From Zootoca vivipara (lineage: Eukaryota), in NCBI RefSeq assembly GCF_963506605.1, contig NC_083279.1, positions 2,790,001-2,854,000 on the forward strand: DNA of 64,000 nt, written 5' to 3'. Of this stretch, positions 3,668 to 62,579 are shown in pieces (the first letter of the stretch is position 1; each line of letters begins with the position of its first letter). Both the position numbers and the translations under genes were made by a program. The notes below the pieces were generated by a model. It did no database searches and was not told the origin of the DNA. It was given only the letters and a program-made list of their open reading frames with translations.

Positions 3668-3816
3668 ATCAAAGAATCCTAGAGTTGGAAGGGGCCCCAG
3701 TGGAATGCATTTAAAGCATCCCTGACAAATGGCCACCCAAGCTCTGCTTAAAAACCTGCAGTGAAAGGGAGTCCACCATCTTCTGAGGGAGCCCACTCCA
3801 CTGTCAAACAGCTCTT
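3668..3816 (-). mobile_element. Old CR1 LINE 3' fragment
   Basis: AGAATCCTAGAGTTGGAAGGGG...GGAGTCCACCA...CCACTGTCAAACAGCTCTT is the reverse complement of the CR1 3' end seen at 42758-43111. Confidence 0.7.
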
Positions 3817-4620
3817 GGCTTTGTTTGCCAAATGCAGTAAAATAAGCATGCTAAATGAGATCACACTCTAGGGCACTGGGAAATTTTTCTAACAGAAACT
3901 GAATTTTTTTCTGATGCAAATTACCATATGGGAAATTGCCCTGAATTCCCAGTTCCGTTTCTTTCCAGAAAGCCCACGTCCCTGGTTAGCCTGGCCTCCC
4001 TCCTGCTGGGATGGGGGCCTCAGGAGGTGCAAATAGGATTGTGCTTCCTCAGTGATCTTCTAACATTGCAGCCATCTGCCTTTCTGATTCTGGGAGAAAT
4101 GCGCTAGGAGAAATGAGTCCCCCTCCCTGAGCGGAGAAGGGGAGAGAACCTCCTGTTTCCATTGAGGCCCCCTCCACATTTTAGAACACCAATTTTCTAT
4201 GTTTCTTTCTTCTAGAAACACGGGGGGAATTACAATGTAAAACATGTCATACCCATCACATATACAGTGAAAACTAAAAATCTAAATAAATCTTACTTAT
4301 TCAGAAAAGCGGAGGAGAGAGACAGATAGGGGGAAAGGGTGTAAAAAGAAGAGACACAGTGAATGAAAAGGGAGTTTGAGAGAGGATCAAAATATGTGGG
4401 TGGCTCTAAGTCCTGATTTCCCAAGAAGGGTCTAAAATGTAGGGGAACCTTCACAAGCCTGGAGGCTTACACCTTTGGAAGTTCACCCTCCAACTCATGG
4501 AGTGTAACAGGGACAGCAAGGGCAGAGGGCAGAGTGAAGCCCATTCATTCCTGTGCCCCTTTTGCATGCTAAATGAACCACTAACCCTAGAAGTTGAAGA
4601 GCAATCTTCTGTAATGAAGA

Positions 4621-4742
4621 CAGGGCTTTTTTTCTCAGCCAGAACTTGCCAGAACTCAGGTGGGTGCCATTGCCATTCTTAGAGAACGAGGGAGGCATTC
4701 GTGGTGAGTTCCAGCACCTTGTTTTCTAGAAAAATAGCACTG
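4621..4742. mobile_element. hAT-like MITE (short, degraded)
   Basis: Imperfect TIRs CAGGGCTTTTTT...AAAATAGCACTG with degenerate 8-bp flanks AATGAAGA/AATAAGGA. A second copy lies at 29002-29123. Confidence 0.6.
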
Positions 4743-4879
4743 AATAAGGATTTATTCATATTTGCCAACTTTCTTTAATTTGTATTCTATCAAGAGAAAA
4801 GATCCTTCCTGCAGTAAGAAACTTATCTAAACTGCTTTGTGAGATCTTCCTGGAAAGCACCCCATTCAATAAATAAACC

Positions 4880-4921
<42 letters not shown>
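4880..4921. repeat. (AAT)n microsatellite
   Basis: Directly visible. Confidence 0.95.
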
Positions 4922-4922
<1 letters not shown>

Positions 4923-6369
4923 TCAGAGGTTGTTCTGATTACAGGGTAGCAAACAATATTGCAGTTTCCTACAAGGCCTTCCTTAATAATATTCCGTGAG
5001 AGAGGAGTTGTATTCATAAATATATTGATATATACAACATATATCTGACATATATCTGACATGTTGTAATGGGAACAGTTCATCAAGGATCCAGCTAGCA
5101 CCTTGCTTCTGACAATTACTGTTAAGCATTTTTGGACAAATGTGTTCAAGAATAGGAAGATAATTTAGGGATTTTATTCCATTTCAATCATTCCCTGTTG
5201 GTAGCAGTCAGAAGACAGACTGATAATGAATTTTGTTCCTCCAAGTTATATGTGCTAATAGCTGTTGATGACCCTATCCTACTCCCCCCCCAATTATTTC
5301 TTCATTTGCACCAGGACTGCAAAACATGCTTCCCAGTATCCACTGCTTCAAGACTTTGAGTTCATCAATAACTTCTCAGTTAGTATTAATGGTGCACAAC
5401 AAATTGTGTGCAATCACATACACATATTACACACATTCACACACACACACCAGGTTCCTAACTCCATTAGAGTGATGGTGTCTTATTAAATTTCCAGGCT
5501 CTGCAAAATTCTGACACTATGAAGTAATAAGATTTAATGTAATGCATGTATGTTTGATACGAAATTTACAGAAACTGACATTTTAATTTACAAGCATACA
5601 CTTGAACCATGTTTGTTTGAAAGAAAGTCCCATTACTTTGGGAAAAATTTACTCACAATAAATCACAGACTGAAAATAAGAAACCTGCATATTTGACAGA
5701 ATGTGGGCATTTTTTTTACAGCTCATTCCTATAGATATGTCTTCTCTGAGGTTCCATGCGTACCTATTGATACTTCTGTTGGCCAGCTCCTTTCAGCACA
5801 GACTTCTCTGTTTTGCTTATGAGGATATTCTTCTGTAAATCAGGATGTGCTTTGATGGCCGTTGCCTTGGGCAGCCCAATCTGCTGCTGGAGAGCAAGGA
5901 GAAGCAGTGACTTCCAGTGAGATCTCATTGCCACTGCTGCTACTCCTCAATTCTCCCGTGGAAGGGAATGCCCTGCCACCACTACCGGAGAAGTAGCTGT
6001 GGCTTCCAGGTTCCAGAAAGATCTTGTGGACCTCTTGTGAGATCTCAGACGAACCCAGAAGCCGCAACCATATGACACCAGTAATCAAGTCTTCAGCGGT
6101 GGAGGGGGAGGTCGCACTTTCCCATTTAGACTCTGGTGGCAAAACATGCCTGGTCATCTCCCTACAGTATCTAAAAATAAATGTTGGTTGCCATTGTAGT
6201 GCCGTGGAACATGGCCAGGATCCAAAGAGCTGTTTGGCAGAGCAACCCCAACAACCCTTCTGCCATGCCGTGGCCAGGATGGGGGTCATGAGCAGAGCAG
6301 GGGTGTCCCTCTGCTTGGATCTCCTGGCTGAGCTCCCATCTGCCCGGCCACCTACCAACCTCATCTATA

Positions 6370-7375
6370 ACCATCTCTGGCAGGCAAGCAGCTTGATAAG
6401 CAGCAAGGACTCTCCGTCAGTTTCATATAAGTTTATTTACAAAAAACAACAACACCCTGTTCTGCCTGCTCTCATTAACCTTAGTTGCTCAGTCTGACTC
6501 ATCGCCCCTCCCCCAACAAGAAGGATGCCCAAATCTTGCCTTTCTTCTCCTTCCCTTCCATTACTCTATGAGCTTTTCTAGCCTCCTCGTATGAGGACTG
6601 CACAGCTGGCCTGTCTCTTCCCCAGAAGATACAGCCTCTGAGTCTAGCTTATCTACTGGTTGCCTAGCTACACTTTGGCCAACTTACAACTCTTCCTCTC
6701 CTTGGGAGCTAACAGTGTCTTGCCTGGGAAGGAGGGGGGCTGGGCTGTCTTCTCCACTGTCTTCTGCTCTGGTCAGACCTCACCTGGAGTACTGTGTCCA
6801 GTTCTGGGCACCACAGTTCAAGAAGGATACTGACAAGCTGGAACGTGTCCAGAAGAGGGCAACCAAAATGGTCAAAGGCCTGGAAACGATGCCTTATGAG
6901 GAAGGGCTTAGGGAGCTGGGTATGTTTAGCCTGGAGAAGAGAAGGTTAAGGGGTGGTATGATAGCCATGTTCAAATATATAAAAGGATGTCATATGGAAG
7001 AGGGTGAAAGGTTGTTTTCTGCTGCTCCAGAGAAGCGGACACAGAGCAATGGATTCAAGCTACAAGAAAGAAGATTCCGTCTAAACATTAGGAAGAACTT
7101 CCTGACAGTAAGAGCTGTTCGGCAGTGGAATTTGCTACCAAGGAGTGTGGTGGAGGTCTTCTTTGGAGGTCTTTAAGCAGAGGCTTGACAGGCATATGTC
7201 AAGAATGCTTTGATGGTGTTTCCTGCTTGGCAGGGGGTTGGACTGGATGGCCCTTGTGGTCTCTTCCAACTCTATGATTCTATGATTCTCTAAACTCAGA
7301 CAGACAGCTCTCATCTGCAGAGTCAGCCCCTTGCTCGCTCAGCTCAATTTCTGAGGCTGACTCTTCCACTGTGCT
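6370..7375 (-). mobile_element. Degraded LTR-like repeat interrupted by a CR1
   Basis: Shares ordered motifs with the solo LTR at 35211-35674 (GGCAAGCA, GACTCTCC, TTTATTTACAAAAA, CTGCTCTCATT, TCAGTCTGA, CTGGTTGCCTAGC, TTGGGAG). Ends are not resolved. Confidence 0.45.
6754..7288 (+). mobile_element. CR1 LINE, 5'-truncated, young
   Basis: ORF2 C-terminus [41 protein letters not shown] and an (ATTCTATG)n tail. Nearly identical to 61750-62462. Confidence 0.95.
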
Positions 7376-10300
7376 CTGGGAGGGGGGGCACGCAGTGGCA
7401 GAGAAAGGGACTGTGGTGGGGGAAGCCCACCCAGATGTCATCCCTGAGATGACATCACTATGCCGCCCCCCTGGGACGCTAGCTGTGGGTGGCAGCGGCG
7501 CCCCCTTGGGATGCTCACCATGGGTGGCGGCAGCATCCCCTACAGGATGTTCGCCACAGGAGGTCCTGCCCCCATGCTCACCACACAACCCCCCTGGGAT
7601 GCTCAGTGCGCCACCCCATGGGCAGATCACCACACCTCTGGAGCAGCTAGCTTCACCTCTGGGGCCACGGTTTGGGCGTCATCTTTCCCTTCACTATGTG
7701 ACCTGCTGGTGGCATGTCTGCCAGCTGAGCCCAACACAAAGCCCCCAAATGGGGGTTTTTTTAGGGCAAGGAGAAAGAGGGGCAGAGTTGAGGGATTTTT
7801 AAAATTTATTTTAACTTTAACTCACCAAGCTGTTATTACCTGCTCTGTAGGATTTATTTTATTTTGCTCTTGGTTCTTTTAAGTTTTTAGCTTTCCATTT
7901 CTGCTTTCTGTATTTTAGGTCTGTCCATATGTCTTAATTTAGGTGGGCTTCCTGTTTTGAAGCTCTACCCCCACCCCATTCTGGAGGTGGAATTGTAGAG
8001 TATATGCTTGTAAACAAACAAGGAAGATCAATTCCACAGCACGGACTATTTCTCCCTCCCTGCCTCAGACTAGCACACATTGGTATTAATTTCACTATTT
8101 GCCATAAGAAGCATTCTGTGCATCTTTCCATGGAGAGATTAAATAGTACATGGGATTAAACTACTTCTTCAGATTTACAAAATGCTGAAATTCCACATTT
8201 TCAACATTCTAGTCTTGTGCTTGCACCCCATCTGTGGGGCTGGTATTCTGTGGGAAGCGGAAGAGGTGTTAATTGGCTCATGCTGAGGTGGGTTATCTCT
8301 CACTCTTCCTTTTTCAAAAAATGCCTTTTCAATCCTTCCCCCAGGGCAGTGCCCGTGAAATTAAAGGAAGAGAGAATAAATGTGGAAAAGATGGTGCCAT
8401 CTTTATTTTCAGTAAGGGGAGACAGGCTAGGGGTGTGTACTTGTAGTACAATACTCTTATCCTGCACGTTGGACTAATGTCTGCCAAACACATCCTGACT
8501 CACACAAAGCATGTAATAAGCTCATTGTAGCTTATTTGGTGGGGAGGGCAGATCCAGCAGAGACTCAAGAGGACATCTATTTTTGTGCCTGGCAAAAACA
8601 GGGAAGCTGATACAAACCGATGAGATTTTTCTTCAGCTCTGGACCAGCTCTGCTTTAGAATGGCATCCTTCAGAATGGAAGAGTAACCTTTTTGTCCCCT
8701 CCTTGCATGTGAAAGGGAACTGAAAGTCAGCAGTGTGCTTCTGTCAGCACAGGCTGTTGAACAATTTCCTGCGGAAGATACGGCACAATGTCTCAAGATG
8801 TATGCTTCAGCTTAGTCTCTGTGCTTAGCTAAGCTTCAGCCAGCCCTGGCACACCAGAGCTAGTGCCAACATGTTGCTGTTGTTCAGAACCGTCCAACTC
8901 CAGGAGCCAAATGTTGATAGGGCACAAAGAGCAAGATAGGGCAAGAGCTCAACTGGGAAGAGAGAAGTGACCAGAAAATGGTGGTGAGCAAATGCCCTTA
9001 ATGGCAATAAGGTTAAATAATTGATCATTTGCACCTCATCTTAATTACAAAAAAGTTCAGAATCATCCTGAACTTTTACCACAGCCATAAGGACATTCAA
9101 ACATTTGCAAATTTCCCCTCTCCTGAGTGCTTGGAGGCTTTTTGAAATTCTGATTCCAGACAAGTTATGTCAGTTTCAAAGAAATACTAGATCTGTAAGA
9201 GAGAAGAGTAGTGAGGATTTCATTCATATCAGGTAATTCTTAAAAAAAAACCAACCTCTAGCTCTGAATTAAGAAAAAAAGTTTTCCTATTTGAACTCTG
9301 CGTCCTCTTTGAAGCCTGCCCTCAGTGCTTTTCATTTTTTAAAGAAAAGAATCTGTCAGCAAAGTCTGTATAGCTTGAGTTGAAGCCTGATTTCTGCTGG
9401 TCACTCTCTCTCTTCTAATCGTGCCATGAAGATTCCTCAAGCCTGGACTTGGTTCCCAAATGAATGGGAGAATTAATGCTCCTCTTCTCCAGGAAAGAAC
9501 TCACTCACCCTACTAAAAGTGACTGGGGGGGGGGAGAGAGAAGGTGAAAGGGGCAAAGCTCAGAGGCTTTGTATAAAAAGGTTACCAGAATCAGTCCCCT
9601 GAATCTTCAAGCAGGACTGGGAAAGACTATTCTCCAAAACCCCAGAGCTCTTAGGCTGGATTTACACTGGTCTGAAAAAACAAACAAACTTTTTTTTAAA
9701 AAAAAAAAACCCAACAACCCTGTAATATAGCTCTCAATGCAATTTCCCATTGACAACGGATCGCTGCTCTACAGTGCCTTCTGGTGTCATATTTTTATAA
9801 CACATTTTTAATGTTATAACTGACCAGTGTAGATTAGTCCTTGGTTAGATTTGTATCTGTACTCATCTACCTTTAAACAGAGAAGTTGAAGCAAGCAAGT
9901 CTCCATCTGTTGGCATTAAAGTGAAGATGAAAAAAGGTTCGAAACAACCTTAAAAGAAAACACATTGGCTTTAATATAAAATGATTGTGCAATCTTTGGG
10001 TTAGAAAGGAAGCAGGCTTTAAGATTTCCCTTTTATAGGGATTCCATTCACTTGAGGGGGCCTGCTAAGCCACACCCACTCTGGTAACTTGAGCACTGGG
10101 CTCAGGTTAACCCTTTTATGCATGCTAGTGTGTGTCAGTAATAGTATATTACAACACAACTCACCATGAGTTAACTTTTAAAATGAAAAGCAGTGAAATA
10201 AACTGCAGTGGGAAATTTAAGGAAACTGCGTTCAACGTGCACAGCTGCACATATACAGCTTCATTTAATCATCATGGCCCATAGAAGCCACATCCTCAGT

Positions 10301-13051
10301 GGAGCCCCCTTGGTGTGCTGTTCACTCTAAAATGAGCTGAGCCTTTGAAAGCATTTCAACTGAAATGCTTTTTACTAGCAAAATCTTGAGGGCCTTGGAA
10401 GCATTTCATGCAAAAGTTCAGAAATTCTTGAACATTTCCTACACACAAAGTTCCGACCTGTGCCAGCTCTGTTCCATGGCTTGGAAACTTGGAAACACAT
10501 CATATACCATGCAAATCATCCTTTGTATTGGTTTGTATTAAGTCATCTTGAGTAAGGAGGACAGAGGAGCATTAATTTTAATGGAATTTGCTTTAAGTAA
10601 GCGTGTTCAGGGTTTCAGGCAGCTCAGATCTCCTGATCCATCATGTAATGATTTTGGGGCAGATGTCCAGCCAGCAGAATGAGTAAGACTCTCCCCAAAT
10701 GCAGTAGGGCTGGCTTACCGCACTCTGGAATACACATGGCCACCTAAAGGGGTGACCCTGTGGAAGGCATGGTTGTCAAACCATTAAAATACTTAACTAA
10801 CTGACCAACCATGTCAATTCTGCTCCCCCCCCCAAAAAAAATCCTGGCTACGCCCATGCTGGAAGGACAGTAAATGCAGAGTCTAAAATTACCAAATTGT
10901 TTCTGGTACCTGAACACTTTAATAGCAACAAGATATTAAAAAATATATCAAAAATCTATCCTACCTCTCAATCCAAAGATGCTCAAGCTGGGTAACGAAC
11001 AGTAATACGCACAGAATATTACAGAGGTGTGTGCAATGTCTCTTTCATATTTCCCCCCTCTAACATTTTAACAAATCAGTTTCGGTTATTGAGACATTGG
11101 GAAGAAAAGGGGGGAAGAGGAGGGTGGGATGGGGAGATGGATGGGGGGGGTGTCCATTCTGAAGGTGGGGAAAGATGATGGTGTGTAGCCTGGTGTAAAT
11201 TAATTTGTAGCCTGTGGGGATCACCACGCCCCACGGTGTGGACTGTCCCTGAGAATCGTAGACTGTTCCTGGGACAGGTAAGGGTGCGGATCCCTTGTTT
11301 TCAAATCCGAAACTTGACAGCTATGCACCCCACCCCAATGGCACCTCTGACTGGAAATGACTTCTTCCGGTTGCCCACTCAGGTCCCAGTTTGTCTCGCT
11401 AACATGCTTCAGAGCTGACGAAATCTGTGCTATTGGGTGAACAGATGGAGATGAAGCTGGAAATGCCAGGCAACTCCAGTAGATGCCAAGCCAATCTGCT
11501 GCTAGGTGCCGACTTCAAACTCTCAGGAATCAGTTACACGATGAGTTCCCCAAGGGAAAATGGCTGCTGCTGCTGCTGCTGCACAACCAGCCCTTGCATG
11601 AAGTGGTAAGTTTGATTCACAACAATAGATTTCCTTCCCTGGGTGACAACCTGCCATGGGCTGCATACCAATGGTGGGTATGGCCAGAGTCCAAAGTGGG
11701 TGGATCAATGTTTGGGACTCTTAATTTTGTGCAACAGCTTAGATTTAAGACATGCAGAAGTCAGAAGTTCCACCGCTGCCACTTCACATCTCCCCACCAT
11801 TCAATCAGGCAAGGAAGACACACCATCCCAGTTTGATGATACATCCCATCTAGGCAAAAGCACGTGAAGAGGACCTGGGGCATGGCTAGTGAAGGTGTGA
11901 CTTGGGCATCCTCTCAAGGGCCAGATGCATTGGATTCCCAGGCCAAAGGGGAAAGCTAGGAAGCCTGGCTCTCAGTGCAAGGAATCCTGCAAATGGTGCC
12001 GTGTGCTTCTGAGCAGAGACATGCTTGCACTCTGCATGGAGAATCTGCAGATGAGCCATTCATGAATTCCAGGCACAATGATGAAATAATAATTATATCA
12101 ACAAGAGTTATTTAGTTAATCTACCCAATAGTTATGCTGAACCTCAACATTTGACTATGATCAATAATCTGTGCCCATGATTTGTATCTATATGAGTTCA
12201 ATTGTAAATTCAGAGGGAACATGAACTGCTTCAACTAAAATATATGAGTATTAGTATCTTCAAGATCTAAGCTTACCTCATCTGTACTGAAATGAGTAGC
12301 AAAAGTACTATATATATCAGGCAGCCAGTGAGATCTAATAAGAATCTGCCAGAAAACTCTCTCACACATACAAACTTCCATTAGCTATATGAATTTTTAT
12401 ACCCCCACACTTAAAGGGTACCTCAATGTCTATTTCAAAGCTGATTTGATGAATACAGAAAAGGTCAAACTAAAAATAACTCAACTGAATCGGTTATGAG
12501 TGTAGTAACATATGCCTCATTTAATAATGAACTCAAAATTTGCTCCACAGTTTAAGTAGTATCATGAATGCTAATTTTGACAGTGAAGGGTTATGAACTA
12601 CCTGTCTGCTGAAGGCTGGCACAAGGTCAGGCAGTTGCAGAGCTAATGAAAACCCCAATGTACCAGATGGCAGATGATTGACATGAGAGTGCTAGCTGAT
12701 GGGAACTCAAAGGGACCCTCATGCATTCAAAGTGACAGTGTCCTGAAACACACATGAGCACACCTTGTTTGCTTCCAAGGGTGAAAATGACTTCTGCTCT
12801 GCTTTGTTTTGTTTTCTCATAGAGATGAGCTGAGCTATCTCAGAGAGATTTTTGGGGGGGGGGTTGCTGAAAGGTTTGAGATTTTTATTTTTTCTCACTC
12901 CACCAGAAGGGAAGGCTACTTCATAGAAATTTGTCTGAATATTCTTCAACTTTTGGGGGGCAGCCACCATTTGCCTCCTATGGTACCCTGGAACAACAAT
13001 ATGTCTGACACATTGAGGAGGATGTATTATTGTGGCCTGTCAGACAATACA

Positions 13052-13052
13052 G

Positions 13053-13111
<59 letters not shown>
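13052..13111. repeat. Compound (GTT)n(GCT)n microsatellite
   Basis: Directly visible. Confidence 0.95.
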
Positions 13112-13131
<20 letters not shown>

Positions 13132-13427
13132 AGTGTTGGGAGACCTCTGGATCAAAGAAAGAATTGGTGCTATTGTCGTGATTGCCACTGCTAATGGCAA
13201 GCTCCCCATCCCCACACCATTAAATTGTTGGAAAAAAATATCCTCCCCGTGGAGAAAATCAGTGAAATTGTTCTTCCAATTTCTCTGTCCACATTTTTCA
13301 TGAAAGATGATGTTGGTGCACATTTTTTATATTGCTGGAAAAGTTAGATTGTGGGGTGTCACTCAAAGTATTATTGCATGCCAAGCTGTCTTGCAAACAT
13401 TTGTTCTGATGGGATACACCACTGTTA

Positions 13428-13535
13428 CTTTTAGAAGACATCTGAAGTCAGCCCTGTTTAGGGAAGCTTTTAATGTTTAATGTTTTTAATGTTTAATAGA
13501 CTTGTATTTTAATATTTTGTTGGAAGCCGCCCAGA
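13428..13535 (+). mobile_element. L2 LINE 3' fragment
   Basis: TTTTAGAAGACATCTGAAGTCAGCCCTGTTTAGGGAAGCTTTTAATGTTT...GGAAGCCGCCCAGAG matches 1337-1430. Confidence 0.8.
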
Positions 13536-13887
13536 GCAACGCATGGCATGGTCAGCTAGTTTCTTTATATAAGGATATACAAGATCCCAACAAATTCTTC
13601 CTGATACTTTCTCTATGCTTGGGGAATTGTATGTTTCAGTTTTAATGGCAGACTCCAACCCAGCAGAACTCAAGTCAGCCTGCAAGTTGCTTAAATGCTC
13701 CCCATTCAAATTTCTCCACTGAACTTTAAACTCTAAATTATCTAGTCTTACTTGCTAAGTGGCAGCAATGCAGTAGAAATTTGCCTTTGCCCCCCTTTGG
13801 CAGCACAAGTTCAATAGGATCAGATGATAGGATCCTCAGCCTTCAAATCTGGAGAGCAGCTGCCCGTCAAAGTAAACAATAATGGGA

Positions 13888-14049
13888 AAACACCTGAAGG
13901 CAGCCCTGTTTAGGGAGGCTTTTAATGTTTAATAGATTATTTTATTTCATTTTTCTGTTGGAAGCCGCCCAGAGTGGCTGGGGAAACCCAGCCAGATGGG
14001 CGGGGTATAAATAATAAATTACTATTACTATTATTACTATTATTATTAC

Positions 14050-14080
<31 letters not shown>
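13888..14080 (+). mobile_element. L2 LINE 3' end with expanded (TAT/TAC)n tail
   Basis: Matches 1345-1496 and ends GGCGGGGTATAAATAATAAA plus a microsatellite tail. Confidence 0.85.
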
Positions 14081-14082
<2 letters not shown>

Positions 14083-17000
14083 AAGGAACTAATAACTCAA
14101 CTGTAGGGGTGACTTTCTAGTGATCTATGGAAGGGAATCAGGTACTCATAATTATGTGCGCCTGTAGAGGATGTCTGAGCTTCGTGGCTCCCTTGATATA
14201 CCTCTGCTGCCTGTATTATGAAAATCCTGGTCTTGGACATAGGTTTCTGGGATGATTACTGACTCCATCTCTTTCCACCTTTAAAACACGTTTCAGTCTG
14301 GGTTGCAAGAAACAGGCCTGTGTTGCCATTTGTTTCATGCCTGGCTGTAAAACATTTGGCTCAATAGATCTGGGTAAAAGGGCATCTGTTAATCTGCCTT
14401 CCTTCCTGTTAGCCTTTGAAAAGCTGACAAACCTGTTTTCTGACAAGACACTGTTAATCTATGCAAGAATTCCTGGGGCTCTTTCCTGTCTTTAGTAGTA
14501 GTCTCTTTGAAGTCCAGGAAGCTTTTTTAGCATCTTGGTGTTAGTTCCAGATCTTCCCAACAGTATCAGATTCAAGGTGGGAGGAAACCTGGGAGGGGTT
14601 TTAGAAGTTAGGATGAATTCTATTGGATGATTTGAATCTTTGTAACCTTTTGATATTGTAATAAAAAGATCTGGCGAAGGGAAAGAGAGACGCACTTTCC
14701 CTCCCAGAGATTTGCTGGTTGAATCTCTGTCCTTTGTCTTTTGTTTCCATGTGGTATTCCCACATTCAACCTAGTAAAACACACCTTCCAGCGTTTCCTA
14801 CTTTTGACTTCTGTGCTTGCATAATTTTTCTCAGTTCATTTGAAACACCTCATCCCAACACACAAATATTGTATCCTCTAAAAACATGGGCTAGGGGCAG
14901 GGGCAATATTGATGCAATATATGCATTATTATGTGTGTGTGAGAGAGTGATCAGGGGGTTAGTGTAGCATATTGGGCTTGTGTTGAAAAAAAATTGTGAG
15001 GGAAGGAATCGTGTTCAATACCTCCAACAGATAAATGGAATGAAATACAATTTTAGCTGTAAGCTGCCTTGAGTCCCTGTCAGGGGGAAAGGCAGGGGGA
15101 AAGTGCAAAGTTGCAATCCTGGTGTATTGGCGATATTTACTCCCACTCCAGCAAAACCCAGGTGGGTTTTCCAGGGTGAATCTGAATGTGTGAGCAAGCC
15201 CCCAAATTTTGACAGCATCCGCAAGGGGTAGGGAAGGAGCAGGAGGAGGCAGGGCCCCTGCTGAAGCCCCCAGTGGACTCACATGTGCTGCTAGATCAGA
15301 AGATCCTTGCAGACCTCATTTGCATAAACAAACAACAAAACATTTTTTTAAAAAAATGTGTGTGGGGTTTTTGGGGTGTGTGCACTGTCCCCAAACACAA
15401 CCACATAGAGGAATGTTTGGATTGAAACCTCAGTGGAATTATCCATTTGTTGCAAGAACAGACATTTGCAGCCTGTAATTTAAGCAGCTACATTGATAAG
15501 CCAACAAAGCAGAAAGCAAAACATGATGCATTGTATCCAGAAAGTAAAATGTATACTACTCAATGAAGAAAGAAGTGGATGGATGCATGTTGCTGGAGCT
15601 CATTTAAATTGATATTTTCAGGTGAAAGTCTAGGGTGGAGCCCTAGAGGCCTCTTCACTTGTGAATCTTTGTGTGTGGAAACATCCCTTTCGCCAAAGAA
15701 ATGGATACATGTTCATAGGAGGACATGAATCAGGGCTACTTGCTCAGCAAAAGAAAGGTATGTACAGGTACTGCTATGATTCAAGGTGCATTTATTCTAA
15801 TTATGCATACAAATTGCCAATTATAGAAGTAGTTAGGTGTTTGCATACTCAGTTAGACTGCAGCATGGGGACACATTTTCATGGAAATATGGGCCTGTAT
15901 CTGAATTTCAAAGAGAAACCCAGCAGAAGGAGCCTGGCTGAACAACAGCACCATCTGCAAGGAACTGAAGAGGAATGCATACCTTGCAGATCTTGTAAAA
16001 GCAAAACAAACAACCCTCAAACATTTTGAAATTAATTTCAAACACAAAGATCACTTAAGCATTAAAGTGTTTGCAAGATCTGATAATGTTTTACATGTAC
16101 CTGAGAGTTCAGCATCATGCACAGAAAAGGATCAGAGGAGAAAGAATTATTTGGACCCCTGCAATTCCAGAGAGGGTTTGCCATTCCTCATCCTGAGATT
16201 TCAGAGCCCAAACCTGAGACCTGGGGGTGGCCTCCGGCGATGCTATTAAACACATCAAACATTCAGGCCATTCAAATAAAAAACACAAAGTCTAGCAAAT
16301 GAGAAAAACATCACTGGTTGAAATGATGGGCTAAGTGGGTGTTCCTATGCTTGTTGTGTGTTTTAATGTTTTAATGATGCAACTGCAGGCATTTAATTTC
16401 CGTCTGATATCATTTCCTTCTGAACTCCAACCTCAACAACACTTCTGCCTATATACATTATACTTCAGGAAAAAAACTAGATTTTAAAAATCAGGTAGGA
16501 ACATTTTAATCCAGTAGACGAAATTGCACAACCTTCTTGATCTTGAGGTTCAGATACATGGGTATTTTCCTACACATGTACATTAAGACAGATGCCAGTA
16601 GCCTCTGAAAATAAATTCCACTTACATAATGACACACATTTCATGTCAATTGAATTCAGTTTTTCTGAGTATATTTATGACGTGAATGAGGCGGGCATCT
16701 TTTTCTATTTTACATGAATAAACAGTTGTCTTGCCTGAAGCATGTCTTTTTTTTCAAATTTTATATTCGAAAATTTGACCTTTAAAATAAAATAATAATA
16801 ACTTACATAATGAATTGCAGAGTACATGCATTAATATTGTATTAGTGGCATATTAGCTCATACAATTTTATGGGCGACAGTCTGAAGGCAAAGATATTTC
16901 ACATTAAAATTTTGTTAAAGAACTACAATAATCCACTTGGATGCAACCTCAACATTTCACAGCTAGAAAAAAAGTGTTTTCGAATTTACCAGGTATTATC

Positions 17001-20686: not shown

Positions 20687-22611
20687 TAACAACAACAACA
20701 AATCCGTTTATTGTGAGGACCATGCCTGTACACAAATAACAACACAGCAATAATTAAAAATATTAAATGATTAAGAAAAATAATTAAAAATATTAAAATT
20801 CATTGCATGCTATCCCAACAAAACCTTCATCCCACAAAACAGGAAGAGAAGGAAGACAAGCAACGAGTTAAACAGATGATGAAGGGGTCTTTACATTGTC
20901 ATCCATAAATCTTTCCCTGGCTTTCATGGCCTTCATCACAAAAACCGCTACCGCTACCGCTACCCCACGTGTTTGCATCAACTAACAAAAATTTTACTCT
21001 ATCTTCAGGATTGATTATAGAGTTGGGTATAATTTGCAGCATTGCATCTCTAAAGCCCGAGTAAATGGGGCAATAGAGGAGGTAATGGGTAAGATCCTCT
21101 TTAATTTTCATAAGGCAAGGGCATAAACGATGTTCTACTGGGGTTTTTGTGAATCTACCGGTCAGATATGCAGTTGGCAATGTTTGGAACCGCGCCATAG
21201 TAAAAGCTCTCCGAAGGGTGGGATCAGTGATCTCCACCAAGTAGTTGGCACAGATTCTGACTGCTTTTACTCGGGGAAACCAGTAGGAAAACCCAGAGTT
21301 TTTTATCTTCGTGGTGTCCAAAAAGGCGTCTTTTTCAAAAATCCATTCCCGAACTTTATCAGGGCTCCACAGTTTGAGAGTATTAAACTCAGGTAGATTG
21401 TATCTGGATAGAATATCTAATAGGTTTTGACGCCAAGTAGTATTATGTTGTAAAGATACTAAGGCTTGCTTAGCCAATAAGGTGTTTGAGGCATCTGCGA
21501 GGTTGGTGAAAAAACGCAGAAATCTTAAGTGGGCCCTGGCAGACACAGAAGGTAATCCTACTTCCACTCTTAGGAAAGCTGCCGGAGTACTCTGAGGGAG
21601 GCCTAGAATTCTTCTGAGATAAAAATTTTGGAAGATTTCAAGCCGTTCTAGCAGCTTCTGATTCCATCCCCAGAGTTCTACCCCATATAGCATCTGGGGA
21701 ATCACTTTTCCAACAAAAGCTTTTAGTGCCGGGATCACCAGTTGCCCTCCCCTCGTATAAAAGAAGCTGAGCAAAGCACCAATTGTCCTATGTGTTAGAA
21801 GGGTTACAGCCTTGACATGGGCACGCCAGCTAGATGTGGCTTGGAAAGTAATACCAAGATATTTTAAAAAGGACACTGTTCAATTATGTGTTCATCTAAA
21901 GACCATCTAAATGTGTGGCGAGCTCTAGTAAACACCACAATTTTGGTTTTGTCATAATTTATCTTTAGAGAGTTTTGGGAACAATAAGCTGCGAGCCCCT
22001 CCAGCATGCTGTGTAGGCCCCTTCGAGTAAGTGCCATGACAGCCATGTCGTCAGCATATAGCAATATATTCAGATGTTTGCCTTCCAGGGCAGGAGCTGA
22101 TGACTTGTACTTCGCCATATGTTGAACAATGTCATTTATATAAAAATTAAATAGGAACGGTGCTAACAAACAACCCTGTTTAACCCCTTTCCCCAGTGGC
22201 AGTGGGTCAGTATAGTTGCCTGACATCCCGGTTCTGATTTTGACTGTGGTATCTGTATGTAACTCTCTAAGTATTTTGAGAAGTCGTCTGTCAATGTCTG
22301 TTTCATATAGTTTTTGCCATAGTTTGTCCCTACAGATTGAATCAAAGGCAGATGTAAGATCTACAAAAGCCACGAAAAGTTTGCTCTTATGTACCTTTGT
22401 ATACTTATCTATCATTGTCTGTAGTACCAAACAATGACCTGTTGTGCTGTGGCCCTTTCTAAACCCTGCCTGTTCCGGATTAAACAAGTTAGAGTGGTCA
22501 GCCCAGTCAACCAGTTTGTTTAGCAGGTAGCGAGTATAGAGTTTGTATGCGATGTCCAGGAGACTTATGGGGCGATAGTTTGACGGGTCTTGGGTGTCTC
22601 CCTTCTTATAA
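20687..22611 (-). mobile_element. RTE-X clade LINE, 5'-truncated, RT domain plus C-terminal Cys/His motif
   Basis: NYRPISLL, EQAGFRKGHST, AFVDLTSAFDS, GVKQGCLLAP, YADD, KYLGI and RLCPC...EDLTHYLLYCP. One frameshift near 21870. AATAAA plus (TTG)n tail. 11-bp TSD ATTGTATAATT at 20676-20686 and 22612-22622. Confidence 0.88.
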
Positions 22612-33380: not shown

Positions 33381-33529
33381 NNNNNNNNNNNNNNNNNNNN
33401 NNNNNNNNNNNNNNNNNNNNNNNNNNNNNNNNNNNNNNNNNNNNNNNNNNNNNNNNNNNNNNNNNNNNNNNNNNNNNNNNNNNNNNNNNNNNNNNNNNNN
33501 NNNNNNNNNNNNNNNNNNNNNNNNNNNNN
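33381..33529. other. Assembly gap (N run)
   Basis: Run of N. Confidence 1.
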
Positions 33530-38598: not shown

Positions 38599-38741
38599 NN
38601 NNNNNNNNNNNNNNNNNNNNNNNNNNNNNNNNNNNNNNNNNNNNNNNNNNNNNNNNNNNNNNNNNNNNNNNNNNNNNNNNNNNNNNNNNNNNNNNNNNNN
38701 NNNNNNNNNNNNNNNNNNNNNNNNNNNNNNNNNNNNNNNNN
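38599..38741. other. Assembly gap (N run)
   Basis: Run of N. Confidence 1.
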
Positions 38742-58596: not shown

Positions 58597-60594
58597 CCCC
58601 ATCATTTCTGTCATTTGGCTCTGCTGACAGGAGTTGGGAGTCCATCAACATCTGGAATGGTGCATGTTAAGACTCCCCGCACCATTCCTCAAGTGGGCCG
58701 GTACCACAATGTTGCTGTGTGGAGTGCGGCCATTCCCTGGTCCAGGCACTCTTCCATTGTTGTGCCATCCACCACAATACTTCCACCCATTTCCCATTCC
58801 ACCACAACAATTAGTCAGCATTTCATAGCCACTTAATTTTGGCTGGTTTGGGGTCTTCTCTGTAGGATCCACCACAAAACATTTTTTTTCAAATCTTCTG
58901 CAAATATTAGAGTTCCACCAAGTCTGTTGATATCACCCTCTTTTGTGCTTTAGCTGTACAAGTAACATCACTCATGTCAAAATATGCCTCAAAAATAGAT
59001 TATCATTTTCTAATATTGTGTTCATTTATTTGGAATTGAAACATTATCTTGTGCTTCAGTACTGAACTATATAAAAGCTTACCTTTGATCCAGAGCAAAG
59101 GCTTGTTCTTTAGAGACAGTTATTTCCACTAATGAAGCCCTTCTCCCCCCCCCCCCAAGAGCTTCCAATTATATTTTCCTTCTTATTGCTAGAGATTAAG
59201 AAAGAGACTATTAATATCTGGTGCAGGTTCACACTGGAAGACCACTTGTGCTATGAAGGTCACCATGCTTACTTAAAGAAATCAGTAGAGTATATTAATT
59301 TAAAAATTAATTAAATGCCAATGCTGAGAAGCTTATTTCTTGTACTGTACTGTTAAGATACAAGACTTCATGAGGTTATCTGTATTAAACTTTCTGGAAA
59401 TGATTTCTCCCTTTTTTCCTTTTCCTTTTATATATTGTGGACCATATGGAATCCAGATTTAACAACAACAAAAGTGGGTTGGTGTGACAAATTATCTTTC
59501 CAGAATGAGAATTGTCCCATCTTAAATGGCATAGCCCTACCTTTGTTTCTTCGCTTCATGCTTCAACGTTAGAAAGACATTTTAAAATTACTTGTTAAGT
59601 ATTATATTATATTTTTATAGCTTTCTGTGTTTTATCCATGTTTGCTTTAATATTTGAGAGTTTCCTTTATTTATTTATTTATTTTATTTATTGAATTCAT
59701 TAATTTTCCTTGAGTTCTGTTTCTGGGAAAAGATGGGATGATAATAATTAAATCATCACCATCACAATTATTGGCAGAGCTCATTTCTTTTAGTTTAGAC
59801 CTCCACAAAATGTAACTCACAAAGACAAATTCAATTCAACACATCTTTTCTCCCCTGATCATTATAGTGGGGACCCTGACTTCTTGGGGGGAGGAAACAT
59901 GGATGCCATTTTGAGCTCCTTAGAGGAAAGACAAGATACGAGCACAGCAAATAAATTAATAAATACTCTCCCACCACCCAGACACTTGCAGCCCATTTGT
60001 GCCCTGTCCTTTCAAATTATTTGGGGTGTATAAACAACAACTGGGATCCTCATTCCATCAGACATCTACTTGCCAAATTAATCTGACTGATCAGTGAAGT
60101 TAATTTAAAAGAGATAATAATCATTTGATTCATAAGCCTGATGGGAATAATATGTGCATTTGTGAGAATGACAATTCACTCTGACATTTTAAGTGCCATT
60201 AGTTTTCTAATGTGTCCCCCCCCCTTAATCTTTCCCACTGCACCAAGAAACAGAAAATGTTAGGGGCTGACCATCTAAAACAAACACATTCTGCTTTACG
60301 TAGAGTTAAAATACCGTGTTTCTCACATTTTAAGACATGTCTTATATTTATTTTTCCTCCAAAAAAACACACCATGGCTTATTTTCAGGGGATGTCTTAT
60401 TTTTTTTTGTTAAGCTTTTTAATTTTTTACTGGTATTAAGCTTTCAGAGTTTTGCTGGGTCGGGCTCGGTGCGGCGCGCGCTGCTGCCCTTGCTGGCTCC
60501 CGCTGGGTCGGGGCTCTCCCTCTCTGAGATAACTACGAGCTCTTCTCCTCCTCACCCCCCAGTCGTGACACGGCTGTCGCGCGGGCTTCCTTAC

Positions 60595-60976
60595 CCGGGT
60601 TGCAGTGCAGCGGCGAGGGCGGCGTGGCGACGGGCGACGAGGGGGCCGTGGAAGGCTGAAGCAAAGACGGTGGCGGAGGCAGCGGCGGGTCTTTGGGGCC
60701 GCCAGCGCCCGGCAAAGGTGCGGCGGGAGGCGGCAGCATGAGGCAGCGATGCGGAGGGGGTAGGCAGCGCACGCAGAACGAGTGGAGGCACGGCAGCAGC
60801 TTGGGCCGCCGGCTCTGGATGTTCTGGCCGCAAACCCCGCAAGTGTCCAACAGGTTGAGCCGCGACTCTCCGTCGGCCCGGTCTGCGGGGCCTTGCCGGC
60901 TTTCAGCCTCGTTTTCCCCACCCATGGCGACAGGACCGGCCGCGGTGGGCCCTGCTCCTGCCATAGGCTCGTCCAT
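60595..60976 (-). CDS. TRIM24: TRIM24 (TIF1-alpha) coding exon 1, partial RING finger; apparently a transposon-captured copy
   Basis: [11 protein letters not shown]...[44 protein letters not shown] matches the TRIM24 N-terminus as I recall it. ATG in ACAATGG context at 60976. Phase-1 donor CGG|GTAAGG at 60594. If unspliced, the frame continues to TAG at 60533 (147 aa). Confidence 0.88.
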
Positions 60977-61310
60977 TGTTCAGCGGCGGCGGCCATTTCA
61001 GGCGCGAAACGCCTCTCACCCAATGGCCGCTTCTGCTCTCACCCTCCCCCCGGCCTGCTCACGAGCGGAGCCCCGCCCCTTCACGGCCGCTGGGAGCAAG
61101 CGACGTCGGTTGCTCGCCGGTGTGATTGGCAGGCTGTTCTGGGCTTGGTCGAATTTGGGGTGGGGGATTCATTCAAGAAAGAGCCGGCAAAGACAGCTGC
61201 GTGTGCTGCGCCGAACCCCGACTGAGCGGGACCCGGGAGAAACAGCAGCGCTCAGTGAGGCGCATGCTGCAAAAGCGCCATGCAGACCTGCTCCCACCAC
61301 TGCTCCCACT
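60977..61310 (-). promoter_or_regulatory. CpG-rich TATA-less promoter/5'UTR of the TRIM24 fragment
   Basis: E2F-type TTTCGCGCC (61001-61009, minus), YY1-like AAATGGCC (60991-60998, minus), GC box (61071-61079), CRE-like GACGTC (61102-61107), CCAAT (61125-61129, minus). Dense CpG. Confidence 0.7.
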
Positions 61311-61447
61311 CAGCATGTCTTATTTTGGGGGGATGCCTTATATTTTATTGCCTCCAGAAAATCGTGCCATGTCTTATTTTATAGGGACGTCTTAAAATGT
61401 GAGAAACACGGTAATGCGGAGTGACATCGTGCTTATTGTTCCATAAA

Positions 61448-62579
61448 TGTCAATGGCAAGAGCCAGGAGCAGGTCGGCAATAACTCACATGGTATCAGTA
61501 AAGTTAAATCTTTATACAAGGAAACAAACAGGCCTAGTGAGTACAGCAACTCTCCCTGGTAGCTCTTGCCCCAATGACAAAGTTGTCAGGACTGAAGGTC
61601 CCTGCCTTCCCACATCTCTCTGCGTCTCCTCACCAGCCTGACTCATCGCTGCCTCTCCAGCCTCCTCTTCTGCCCCTGATTCTGCGCTGCTGTCTGCCCC
61701 AGCCTCTTCCTGCTCACAAAACCCTGTTACCTCTTCAGCTTCTGACATCAAATCCAGGATGGGTGACACCTGGCTTGAGAGCAGTACATGAGAAAAGGAT
61801 CCAGGAGTCTTGGTAGACCACAGACTTGACATGAGTCAACAGTGTGATGCAGCAGCTAAAAAAGCCAAAGCAATTCTGGGCTGCATCAATAGGAGTATAG
61901 CATCTAGATCAAGGGAAGTAATAGTACCACTGTATTCTGCTCTGGTCAGACCTCACCTGGAGTACTGTGTCCAGTTCTGGGCACCACAGTTTAAGAAGGA
62001 TACTGACAAGCTGGAACGTGTCCAGAAGAGGGCAACCAAAATGGTCAAAGGCCTGGAAATGATGCCTTATGAGGAACGGCTAAGGGAACTGGGCATGTTT
62101 AGCCTGGAGAAGAGAAGGTTAAGGGGTGATATGATAGCCATGTTCAAATATATAAAAGGATGTCATATAGAGGAGGGAGAAAGGTTGTTTTCTGCTGCTC
62201 CAGAGAAGCAGACACGGAGCAATGGATTCAAACGGCAAGAAAGAAGATTCCACCTAAACATTAGGAAGAACTTCCTGACAGTAAGAGCTGTTCGGCAGTG
62301 GAATTTGCTACCAAGGAGTGTGATGGAGTCTCCTTTTTGGGGGGTCTTTAAGCAGAGGCTTGACAGGCATATGTCAAGAATGCTTTGATGGTGTTTCCTG
62401 CTCAGCAGGGGGTTGGACTGTATGGCCCTTGTGGTCTCTTCCAATTCTATGATTCTATGATTCCTCTTGGTTGGCTACTCTCCTCCCTCTGCCCACCTAT
62501 CCTGGTCCTGCCACGTCTTTCCCTGCAGTTCCCCTTCCAGTCCTTCTTCCAGTCCTCTGCATCCAGCCAGTCCAGGACA
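61448..62579 (-). mobile_element. Possible LTR-like repeat interrupted by CR1
   Basis: CT-rich segments 61448-61735 and 62463-62579 either side of the CR1, with TG...CA ends. No convincing TSD. Confidence 0.35.
61750..62462 (+). mobile_element. CR1 LINE, 5'-truncated, young
   Basis: Open ORF2 C-terminus (61810-62388: [25 protein letters not shown]...[17 protein letters not shown]) and an (ATTCTATG)n tail. Possible TSD CCTCTT. Confidence 0.95.

What the first reader, a model, noticed from the sequence alone, without database searches (positions are those of the whole stretch)
60314..61411. DNA transposon that has captured the promoter, exon 1 and splice donor of TRIM24 (Pack-TIR gene capture)
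Seen: perfect 23-bp TIRs plus TA duplications enclose about 140 bp and 100 bp of AT-rich arms with subterminal repeats. Between them are about 850 bp of CpG-island DNA holding a TRIM24 5' end with an intact reading frame. The CpG-rich sequence stops abruptly at the arms, and by eye I found no TRIM24 exon 2 (VGVIRCPVC...DNFFVKD) in the ~60 kb downstream on the minus strand. Established: TA TSDs and CCGT-starting TIRs are typical of Tc2/pogo-like Tc1/mariner elements. Gene-fragment capture is well known for plant Pack-MULE/Pack-CACTA elements and is less commonly reported for animal TIR elements. Inference: this is not the native locus but a mobilisable promoter-exon cassette. Perfect TIRs and retained CpGs suggest it is young and possibly multicopy.
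Basis: partly seen in the sequence, partly recalled or inferred. Interest (0 to 1): 0.92.

Follow-up and report, generated by a model that had tools for sequence, protein, structure and literature searches.

The report
Lizard transposon carrying TRIM24 first exon
A 1.1-kb cut-and-paste transposon in a lacertid lizard carries a copy of the start of the TRIM24 gene and seems to have multiplied to some 15-40 copies in this species, which is rare in vertebrates, but this copy looks decayed and silent.

Summary
Perfect 23-bp inverted ends (60314-60336 / 61389-61411), each next to a TA, enclose a sharply bounded CpG island. On the minus strand this holds the start codon, 127 codons and GT splice donor of TRIM24 (TIF1-alpha) exon 1. 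No other TRIM24 exon lies in the window.

Public reads support capture. In two related species the exon-1 DNA sits on one single-copy contig whose other 4 kb does not match the window's flanks. In this species the cargo contigs are 15-18 times deeper than the single-copy flanks and 97-98% identical to the window. Contigs that cross both cargo/carrier joins are equally deep, so the chimera was amplified as a unit. The end 92 bp belongs to a MITE family at roughly 18,000 times single-copy depth.

This copy is not young. It has 12 private substitutions, 7 of them CpG decay, and one changes a conserved Tyr to Cys. An RNA run shows almost no reads on it.

Only about 650 bp (60522-~61174) is shown to be TRIM24-derived. 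The outer GC-rich parts look like carrier DNA.

It is a new, unusually amplified member of a known kind (animal Pack-TIRs, Tan 2021). Unchecked notes of this scan describe similar first-exon captures elsewhere in this genome. Other copies' flanks, the empty site and the transposase were not seen.

The parts
60312..60313 (.). Left TA target-site duplication
   Evidence: Part of the 25-nt perfect inverted repeat (I2). RNA reads from other family copies match from 60312 onward, with unrelated letters before it (table 7).
60314..60336 (+). Left terminal inverted repeat, 23 bp
   Evidence: The flank-to-TIR junction lies on an error-free 1775-bp single-copy contig of an independent sample (X2 record 17).
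60337..60405 (+). Left arm: high-copy MITE end with ~54-nt repeat units
   Evidence: D1/D2. Depth is ~3.1e5 against 16.6 for the flanks in X2. Other copies diverge after 60404-60406 in all runs (tables 2 and 7).
60406..60458 (+). AT-rich subfamily-specific spacer
   Evidence: Depth is about 6,200 at 60445 (~375x), and half the copies carry an extra AG there (table 4).
60459..60521 (+). Left GC-rich inner segment, probably carrier DNA or an older capture
   Evidence: It has inverted similarity to 61181-61251 (I1, score 32 against 16.8±2.8 in shuffles). Depth is ~3,700 in X2 but not raised in the relatives. It is not matched by the relatives' exon-1 contig. Other copies diverge at 60512.
60522..60594 (-). 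Captured first 73 bp of TRIM24 intron 1, beginning with the GT donor at 60594-60593
   Evidence: The relatives' native contig matches from 60522 (table 8). The Varanus read-through protein aligns into this stretch. GTAAG is seen.
60595..60976 (-). Captured TRIM24 exon-1 coding part: ATG, 127 codons plus 1 base (phase 1), first six zinc ligands of the RING
60977..61174 (-). Captured 5' leader and proximal upstream DNA of TRIM24 (~200 bp, with a CCAAT motif and a CRE-like palindrome)
   Evidence: The relatives' native contigs match to 61098, plus a short piece around 61156 (tables 2, 3, 8). The motifs were read and I5. Promoter function was not tested.
61175..61295 (+). Right GC-rich inner segment, origin unresolved (carrier, older capture or diverged upstream DNA)
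   Evidence: It has inverted similarity to 60459-60516. The multicopy X2 contig follows the window to 61236 and then departs from it (tables 5c and 8).
61296..61388 (+). Right arm with ~54-nt repeat units
   Evidence: D1. Depth is 3,500-14,700 in X2.
61389..61411 (-). Right terminal inverted repeat, 23 bp
   Evidence: The TIR-to-flank junction lies on an error-free single-copy contig (X2 record 21, 61387-61614).
61412..61413 (.). Right TA target-site duplication
   Evidence: I2.

Best explanation
This is a non-autonomous cut-and-paste DNA transposon. It has a TA duplication and 23-bp TIRs, so it is most likely of the Tc1/mariner superfamily, and it belongs to a MITE family with thousands of copies. 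It acquired about 650 bp of the TRIM24 (TIF1-alpha) 5' end as DNA: ~200 bp upstream and leader, the whole first coding exon, the splice donor and 73 bp of intron 1. The likely route (inferred) is template switching during repair or replication of the element. The chimeric element was then mobilised in trans and multiplied to roughly 15-40 copies in this species' lineage after it split from two sequenced relatives. The copy in the window is one decaying, apparently silent member. It sits in repeat-rich DNA and is not the TRIM24 gene. Shown here: the structure, the identity of the cargo, a different context for the cargo in relatives, and excess depth of cargo and of the cargo/carrier joins. Inferred: transposition as the means of amplification, the capture mechanism, and the lack of function.
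For: - Ends: perfect TIRs plus TA, unique in the window. Reads from other family copies begin to match exactly at the TA (table 7).
- Family without cargo: cargo-less forms of the family join 60364 to 61315 and 60408 to 61357 (tables 5 and 5c).
- Cargo identity: it is TRIM24 exon 1, and no further TRIM24 exon lies in 60 kb downstream.
- Relatives: the cargo lies on one contig each, at single-copy depth (39.2 against 41.5 for the flanks; 12.5 against 12.5). These contigs are 4.9 and 4.2 kb long, and their remaining DNA does not match the window's flanks. The window's left flank is on another contig (table 8).
- Same species, independent sample X2: both flank/TIR junctions are present without error at depth 16.6. 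Cargo contigs have depth 248-303 and are 97-98% identical to the window. They include contigs that cross the left join (60483-60584) and the right join (61098-61236) (table 8).
- Decay: at 12 sites the window differs from the X2 multicopy contig and from both relatives alike. Seven of these are CpG-to-TpG/CpA changes, and four are amino-acid changes, including Y78C at a residue that is Tyr in Varanus and Gekko.
- CpG island: it ends abruptly inside the element.
Against: - No other copy was seen with its own flanks or TA, so transposition rather than segmental duplication is inferred.
- Copy number comes from contig k-mer depth, which the tool warns is not a copy number.
- The native TRIM24 exon 1 of this same species was not seen directly. 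The only sign is one RNA read with 10 or more mismatches that carries the relatives' letters at 60959 and 60982.
- The state of the orthologous site in relatives is unresolved. The X12 contig stops at 60311 with 80 unaligned letters.
- No transposase or named TE family was matched.
- The origin of 60459-60521 and 61175-61295 is unclear.
Confidence: 0.85

Rival explanations
1. A real capture, but the amplification was not by transposition. The ~15-40 cargo copies would come from segmental or tandem duplication of a region holding one Pack element, or from repeated independent captures.
For: No other copy's flanks were observed, and depth alone cannot tell the mode of amplification. Tan et al. 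found that most animal Pack-TIRs are single-copy and arise without transposition (PMC8277862).
Against: The window's flanks are strictly single-copy right up to the TIRs (16.6 against 248-303), so this copy is not part of a larger duplicated block. The TIRs are intact and the carrier family has thousands of copies. Both joins are shared at the same depth, which argues for one capture event followed by spread of the unit.
Confidence: 0.08
2. This is the native TRIM24 5' end. Two independent insertions of the same MITE family happen to bracket the promoter and exon 1, and intron 1 is longer than 60 kb or exon 2 is hidden.
For: TA is obligatory for such elements, so matching 'TSDs' prove little. 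Vertebrate TRIM24 first introns can be long (own knowledge). Three masked N runs exist downstream.
Against: The relatives' single-copy exon-1 contigs lose all similarity to the window within ~75 bp of the donor and ~200 bp of the ATG. They are not collinear with the window's flanks. The cargo is 15-18 times deeper than the flanks in this species. The copy carries private CpG decay and a Y78C change. There is essentially no RNA cover. The N runs lie in SINE- or LINE-like DNA.
Confidence: 0.03
3. The element is a functional cassette: a mobile promoter with first exon that makes chimeric transcripts, or a truncated-RING decoy of a TE-silencing cofactor.
For: The ATG, open frame and consensus-like donor GTAAG are intact. 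About 200 bp of upstream DNA with CCAAT- and CRE-like motifs is retained. Some animal Pack-TIRs are transcribed as chimeras (PMC8277862).
Against: In about 1.1 billion RNA letters there was about 0-1 read on the cargo at 88% likeness or more, although 15-40 near-identical copies could contribute. No joint from the donor was seen. The change pattern looks neutral, with 4 non-synonymous and 4 synonymous changes and CpG decay. The RING lacks its last zinc-ligand pair, and an unspliced reading stops after 147 aa.
Confidence: 0.04

Closest known systems
Animal Pack-TIRs (Tan et al. 2021, Nat Commun 12:4280, PMC8277862), TcMariner class
   Same: A TIR-bounded non-autonomous element with a TSD encloses a DNA-level copy of a gene fragment whose parent lies elsewhere. 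TcMariner was the second commonest carrier, with 115 of 370 cases.
   Different: That survey reports only four multicopy cases among its Pack-TIRs, and the one exemplified there has three copies. Here depth suggests 15-40 copies. The words lizard, Anolis, anole and reptile do not occur in that paper's main text. The cargo here is a CpG-island 5' end with a whole first coding exon and its donor.
Pack-MULEs of grasses (own knowledge: Jiang et al. 2004 Nature; Jiang et al. 2011 PNAS)
   Same: Amplified gene-fragment-carrying TIR elements with a bias toward GC-rich 5' gene ends.
   Different: A different superfamily (Mutator, 9-10-bp TSD, long TIRs) and plants. No sign of expression or small-RNA output was seen here.
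Ssk-FB4 multicopy Pack element of Drosophila (PMC8277862)
   Same: A chimeric element spread by repeated transposition. The parent is distant. Template switching followed by transposition was proposed.
   Different: Ssk-FB4 carries a nearly whole gene and is expressed and under selection. Here only a first exon is carried and this copy is decaying.
Stowaway- or Tc1/mariner-type MITEs
   Same: TA duplication, short TIRs, no coding capacity, thousands of copies.
   Different: An internal ~54-nt direct-repeat array and a gene-derived cargo. The autonomous partner is unknown.

Membership tests
Pack-TIR (gene fragment inside a TIR transposon) | Both ends are TIRs of a repeated TIR-transposon family | tested here: met
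   A 23/23 TIR. The end 92 bp is ~18,000 times deeper than the single-copy flanks in X2 and thousands of times deeper in two relatives. Cargo-less joined forms were seen.
Pack-TIR (gene fragment inside a TIR transposon) | Target-site duplication flanks the element | tested here: met
   TA on both sides. This is weak on its own, because TA is the obligatory target.
Pack-TIR (gene fragment inside a TIR transposon) | The interior is non-TE DNA copied from a parental gene located elsewhere | tested here: met
   The cargo is TRIM24 exon 1. In two relatives it lies on single-copy contigs with other flanks. The parental locus of this same species was not seen directly.
Pack-TIR (gene fragment inside a TIR transposon) | Multicopy class: several copies with the same chimeric joins but different insertion sites and TSDs | tested here: inconclusive
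   Contigs spanning the joins have depth 248-303 against 16.6 for the flanks.
   A 3-bp reading (ATA / TAA) does not match, and no TTAA is present.
   There is no second TIR copy in the window and no hit in metagenome contigs. The genome itself cannot be searched here.
No Repbase or Dfam library is on hand.
TRIM24 / TIF1-alpha gene | Complete RING, B-boxes, coiled coil and PHD-bromodomain encoded at the locus | tested here: not met
   Only exon 1 is present, with six of the eight RING ligands. tblastn with full-length TRIM24-like proteins finds nothing else in 64 kb. This is a gene fragment, not a gene.

The most novel reading that the evidence does not exclude
This lacertid lineage may have had recently active DNA transposons of several superfamilies that repeatedly pick up CpG-island first exons and amplify them to tens of copies. 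That would be a vertebrate counterpart of the Pack-MULE bias for GC-rich 5' gene ends. The TRIM24 element would be one family of a genome-wide set that scatters promoter/first-exon/donor cassettes able to seed chimeric genes. Unchecked notes of this scan describe similar cases for ATXN7L2, IQSEC2, OSBPL10, MCAT, EPB41L4B and PPME1 in the same genome.
Probability: 0.3. Interest if true: 0.72.

Novelty: new member of a known kind. Interest (0 to 1): 0.45.

Why it matters
Gene-fragment capture by cut-and-paste transposons is well documented in plants but thought to be rare and nearly always single-copy in animals. An amniote in which a captured CpG-island first exon with its splice donor has spread to tens of copies after a recent species split is a natural system for two questions. 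The first is how capture happens (gap filling, or template switching followed by transposition). The second is whether dispersed promoter/first-exon cassettes ever create new chimeric genes. For genome annotation the practical point is that TRIM24-like first exons in this genome are mostly transposon cargo, not genes.

Tried and rejected
- Motif and tblastn searches for TRIM24 exon 2 and the B-box exons in the window found none.
- The flanks of the three N runs look like SINE or LINE DNA, with no sign of exons. The runs were not filled.
- BLASTN of the arms and the cargo against the window found no other copy.
- The 23-mer TIR found 0 hits in metagenome contigs.
No native squamate TRIM24 locus could be aligned base by base, so the breakpoints could not be checked for microhomology.
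- The search for homologous proteins with the 147-aa read-through ORF gave only other squamates' TIF1-alpha fragments at 83-88% identity. It gave no near-identical sister copies, so there is no second route to copy number.
- The search of earlier findings by sequence came back blank, which means nothing.
- Pfam on the largest ORFs of the window found only LINE reverse-transcriptase fragments and no host gene.
- The perfect TIRs do not show youth.
- The decoy-RING and portable-promoter ideas have no support in the RNA run.

Full report
**1. What is in the sequence.**

TA plus a 23-bp sequence at 60312-60336 is the perfect reverse complement of 61389-61413 (I2). The 23-mer, even with three mismatches allowed, occurs nowhere else in the 64 kb, and shuffles give 0.

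Inside the ends are AT-rich arms. Their shared similarity beyond the TIR is direct, not inverted. About 54-nt units built around GTCTTAT(A)TTT recur at 60348-60399, 61289-61340 and 61343-61394 (D1/D2). The ancestral element therefore looks like TIR, short tandem array, TIR.

Between the arms is the only strong CpG island of the window. There are 6-13 CpG per 100 bp from about 60401 to 61300, and 0-4 on either side.

On the minus strand an ATG at 60976 opens 127 codons, up to 60595, followed by GTAAG. The peptide carries the first six zinc ligands of a RING (weak matches below Pfam's cut-offs).

**2. Identity of the coding piece.**

A search of 1.8 billion representative proteins gave as best hit a 306-aa protein, 84% identical over all 128 residues. 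NCBI names it 'Transcription intermediary factor 1-alpha, partial [Varanus komodoensis]'. A second search adds 'transcription intermediary factor 1-alpha-like [Notechis scutatus]' at 83%. TIF1-alpha is TRIM24.

The Varanus model reads through into intron 1, and its alignment to the window continues past the donor to 60536. The window therefore also holds the start of intron 1.

**3. Is this the native gene?**

No further TRIM24 exon is in the window. Motif searches for the rest of the RING and for the B-boxes found nothing. tblastn with the Varanus protein (which includes exon 2) and with full-length TRIM24-like proteins hit only exon 1.

Three N runs lie downstream. Their flanks read as SINE- and LINE-like repeats. 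I did not fill them. The large ORFs of the window are LINE reverse-transcriptase remnants, and no host gene was recognised.

**4. Public reads.**

I laid 59400-62300 on four runs: an RNA run of the same species (X21), contigs of an independent sample of the same species (X2), and contigs of two related species (X12, X14).

(a) *The insertion is real.* In X2 a 1775-bp contig covers 59400-60338 and a 228-bp contig covers 61387-61614. Both are error-free at depths 16.6 and 16.3. Both flank/TIR junctions therefore exist in another individual at single-copy depth.

(b) *The ends belong to a very large family.* Depth over 60273-60466 is about 3.1e5 in X2, roughly 18,000 times the flanks, and 1e4-2e5 in the relatives. 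Reads and contigs from other copies start to match exactly at 60312 (the TA) and leave the window's sequence at 60404-60406. Cargo-less forms join 60364 to 61315 (X12) and 60408 to 61357 (X2).

(c) *In the relatives the cargo is single-copy and lies elsewhere.*
- X12 holds 60522-61098 on one 4871-bp contig (depth 39.2; flanks 41.5).
- X14 holds it on one 4200-bp contig (depth 12.5; flanks 12.5).
- Short further matches reach about 61174.
- The remaining ~3.1 kb and ~1.2 kb of these contigs match nothing in the stretch.
- The window's left flank is on a different contig (X12 record 2, 59703-60311).

As TRIM24 is a conserved single-copy vertebrate gene (own knowledge), these contigs are most simply its native 5' end.

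(d) *In this species the cargo is amplified.* X2 contigs on the cargo have depths of 247.7, 288.6 and 303.3, which is 15-18 times the flanks, and are 97-98% identical to the window (8 differences in 340 bases). Summed bins reach 390-800. A fair range is therefore 15-40 copies, with the tool's caution that depth is not a copy number. The relatives serve as an internal control against a GC bias.

Importantly, the 102-bp contig at 60483-60584 crosses the left join of carrier and intron. The contig at 61098-61236 crosses the right one. Both are at the amplified depth. What multiplied is the chimera, not the exon alone.

(e) *A hierarchy of depths in X2.* The outermost part is at ~18,000x, 60445-60563 and 61243-61339 are at ~200-375x, and the cargo is at ~15-40x. 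This suggests nested subfamilies.

The GC-rich inner segments 60459-60516 and 61181-61251 are imperfect inverted repeats of each other in two registers (I1, 1 of 500 shuffles as good). The relatives' native contig does not match them. I take them for carrier DNA or an older capture. The TRIM24-derived part is then about 60522-61174 (~650 bp), not 850 bp.

**5. Age and state of this copy.**

At 12 sites the window differs from the X2 multicopy contig and from both relatives alike (table 3).
- Seven are CpG to TpG or CpA.
- Of the eight in the coding part, four change the protein (P110T, P104S, S88L, Y78C).
- Position 78 is Tyr in Varanus and Gekko.

That is about 1.8% private change with a neutral look. 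At this rate 46 TIR bases would stay unchanged about four times in ten, so the perfect TIRs do not show youth.

The divergence between cargo and relatives' native copy is 26-29 differences in 577 bp. This is about that of the flanks (23 in 609), and the relatives show no amplification. The spread therefore dates from around or after the species split.

**6. Expression.**

In about 1.1 billion letters of an RNA run (6% of it) the cargo has 0-1 read. That read has at least 10 mismatches and carries the relatives' letters at 60959 and 60982, so it likely comes from the native gene. No joint from the donor was reported.

The many RNA reads on the arms come from other family copies, as shown by loose ends on both sides. 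This gives no support for promoter or decoy function, but one sample cannot exclude it. An unspliced reading would end after 147 aa.

**7. Mechanism.**

- Shown: a TA/TIR element with a DNA-level copy (intron included, so not a retrocopy) of a gene's 5' end, with shared joins at amplified depth.
- Inferred: capture by template switching during double-strand-break repair or replication of the element, then mobilisation in trans by a Tc1/mariner-type transposase. These are the models discussed for animal Pack-TIRs (PMC8277862).

Microhomology at the breakpoints could not be examined.

**8. Comparison with what is known.**

Tan et al. (2021) found 370 Pack-TIRs in 100 animal genomes, 115 of them in TcMariner elements. 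Only four were multicopy, three in a frog and one in an alligator, and the one exemplified has three copies. The words lizard, Anolis, anole and reptile do not occur in the main text of that paper.

The present element meets the structural criteria for a Pack-TIR. It is unusual for its apparent copy number and for carrying a whole first coding exon with its leader and donor.

The superfamily call rests on the TA and short TIRs alone. The Tc2/pogo label is untested.

Notes of this scan list further first-exon captures in the same genome, several said to be at tens of copies:
- in hAT elements: MCAT, OSBPL10, EPB41L4B, UNC13B;
- in a Helitron: PPME1;
- in TA-type elements: ATXN7L2, IQSEC2.

I did not check them. 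They suggest a genome-wide pattern that would be more interesting than any single case.

**9. Verdict.**

It is a new and unusually amplified member of a known kind.

Not seen directly:
- other copies' insertion sites;
- the native TRIM24 exon 1 of this species;
- the state of the orthologous site in relatives;
- the autonomous partner.

Noticed in passing
window 61631-62300 (sharp edge at 61749): A repeat of extreme copy number, with summed depth 1e5 to 2.6e6 in all three DNA runs. It has a poly-A-type junction at 61749 and many RNA reads, and is probably a squamate SINE or LINE tail next to the element.
   Followed up: no
window 33381-33529, 38599-38741, 48606-48754: Three N runs of 143-149 bases. 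Their flanks read as SINE-like (48.6-48.9 kb) and LINE-like (38.7-38.9 kb) repeats, not TRIM24 exons.
   Followed up: partly
window 60459-60516 and 61181-61251: The GC-rich inner segments of the element are imperfect inverted repeats of each other in two registers, and a 48-nt direct repeat lies on the left side. They are ~200-375 times deep in this species but not in the two relatives. They may be a carrier subfamily or an older captured CpG island (mosaic cargo).
   Followed up: partly
window 60405-60406 and 60512 (loose ends): Many other copies of the same MITE continue at these points into different GC-rich sequences, for example CCTCCTCCTCCTGCCGCGGCC.... The family may carry several different interiors.
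   Followed up: no
window 21867-22487 (-) and 39559-40068 (-): Reverse-transcriptase (RVT_1) ORF remnants of LINE elements. No host-gene exon was recognised anywhere in the window.
   Followed up: partly
window 13054-13131: A (TGC)n-type microsatellite that reads as a poly-Cys run.
   Followed up: no
same genome, other pieces (scan notes s1-853059, s1-849345, s1-852634, s1-850069, s1-848604, s1-850499): Other first-exon captures by hAT, Helitron and TA-type elements are noted in this genome, several said to be at tens of copies. This may be a genome-wide capture-and-amplify pattern.
   Followed up: no
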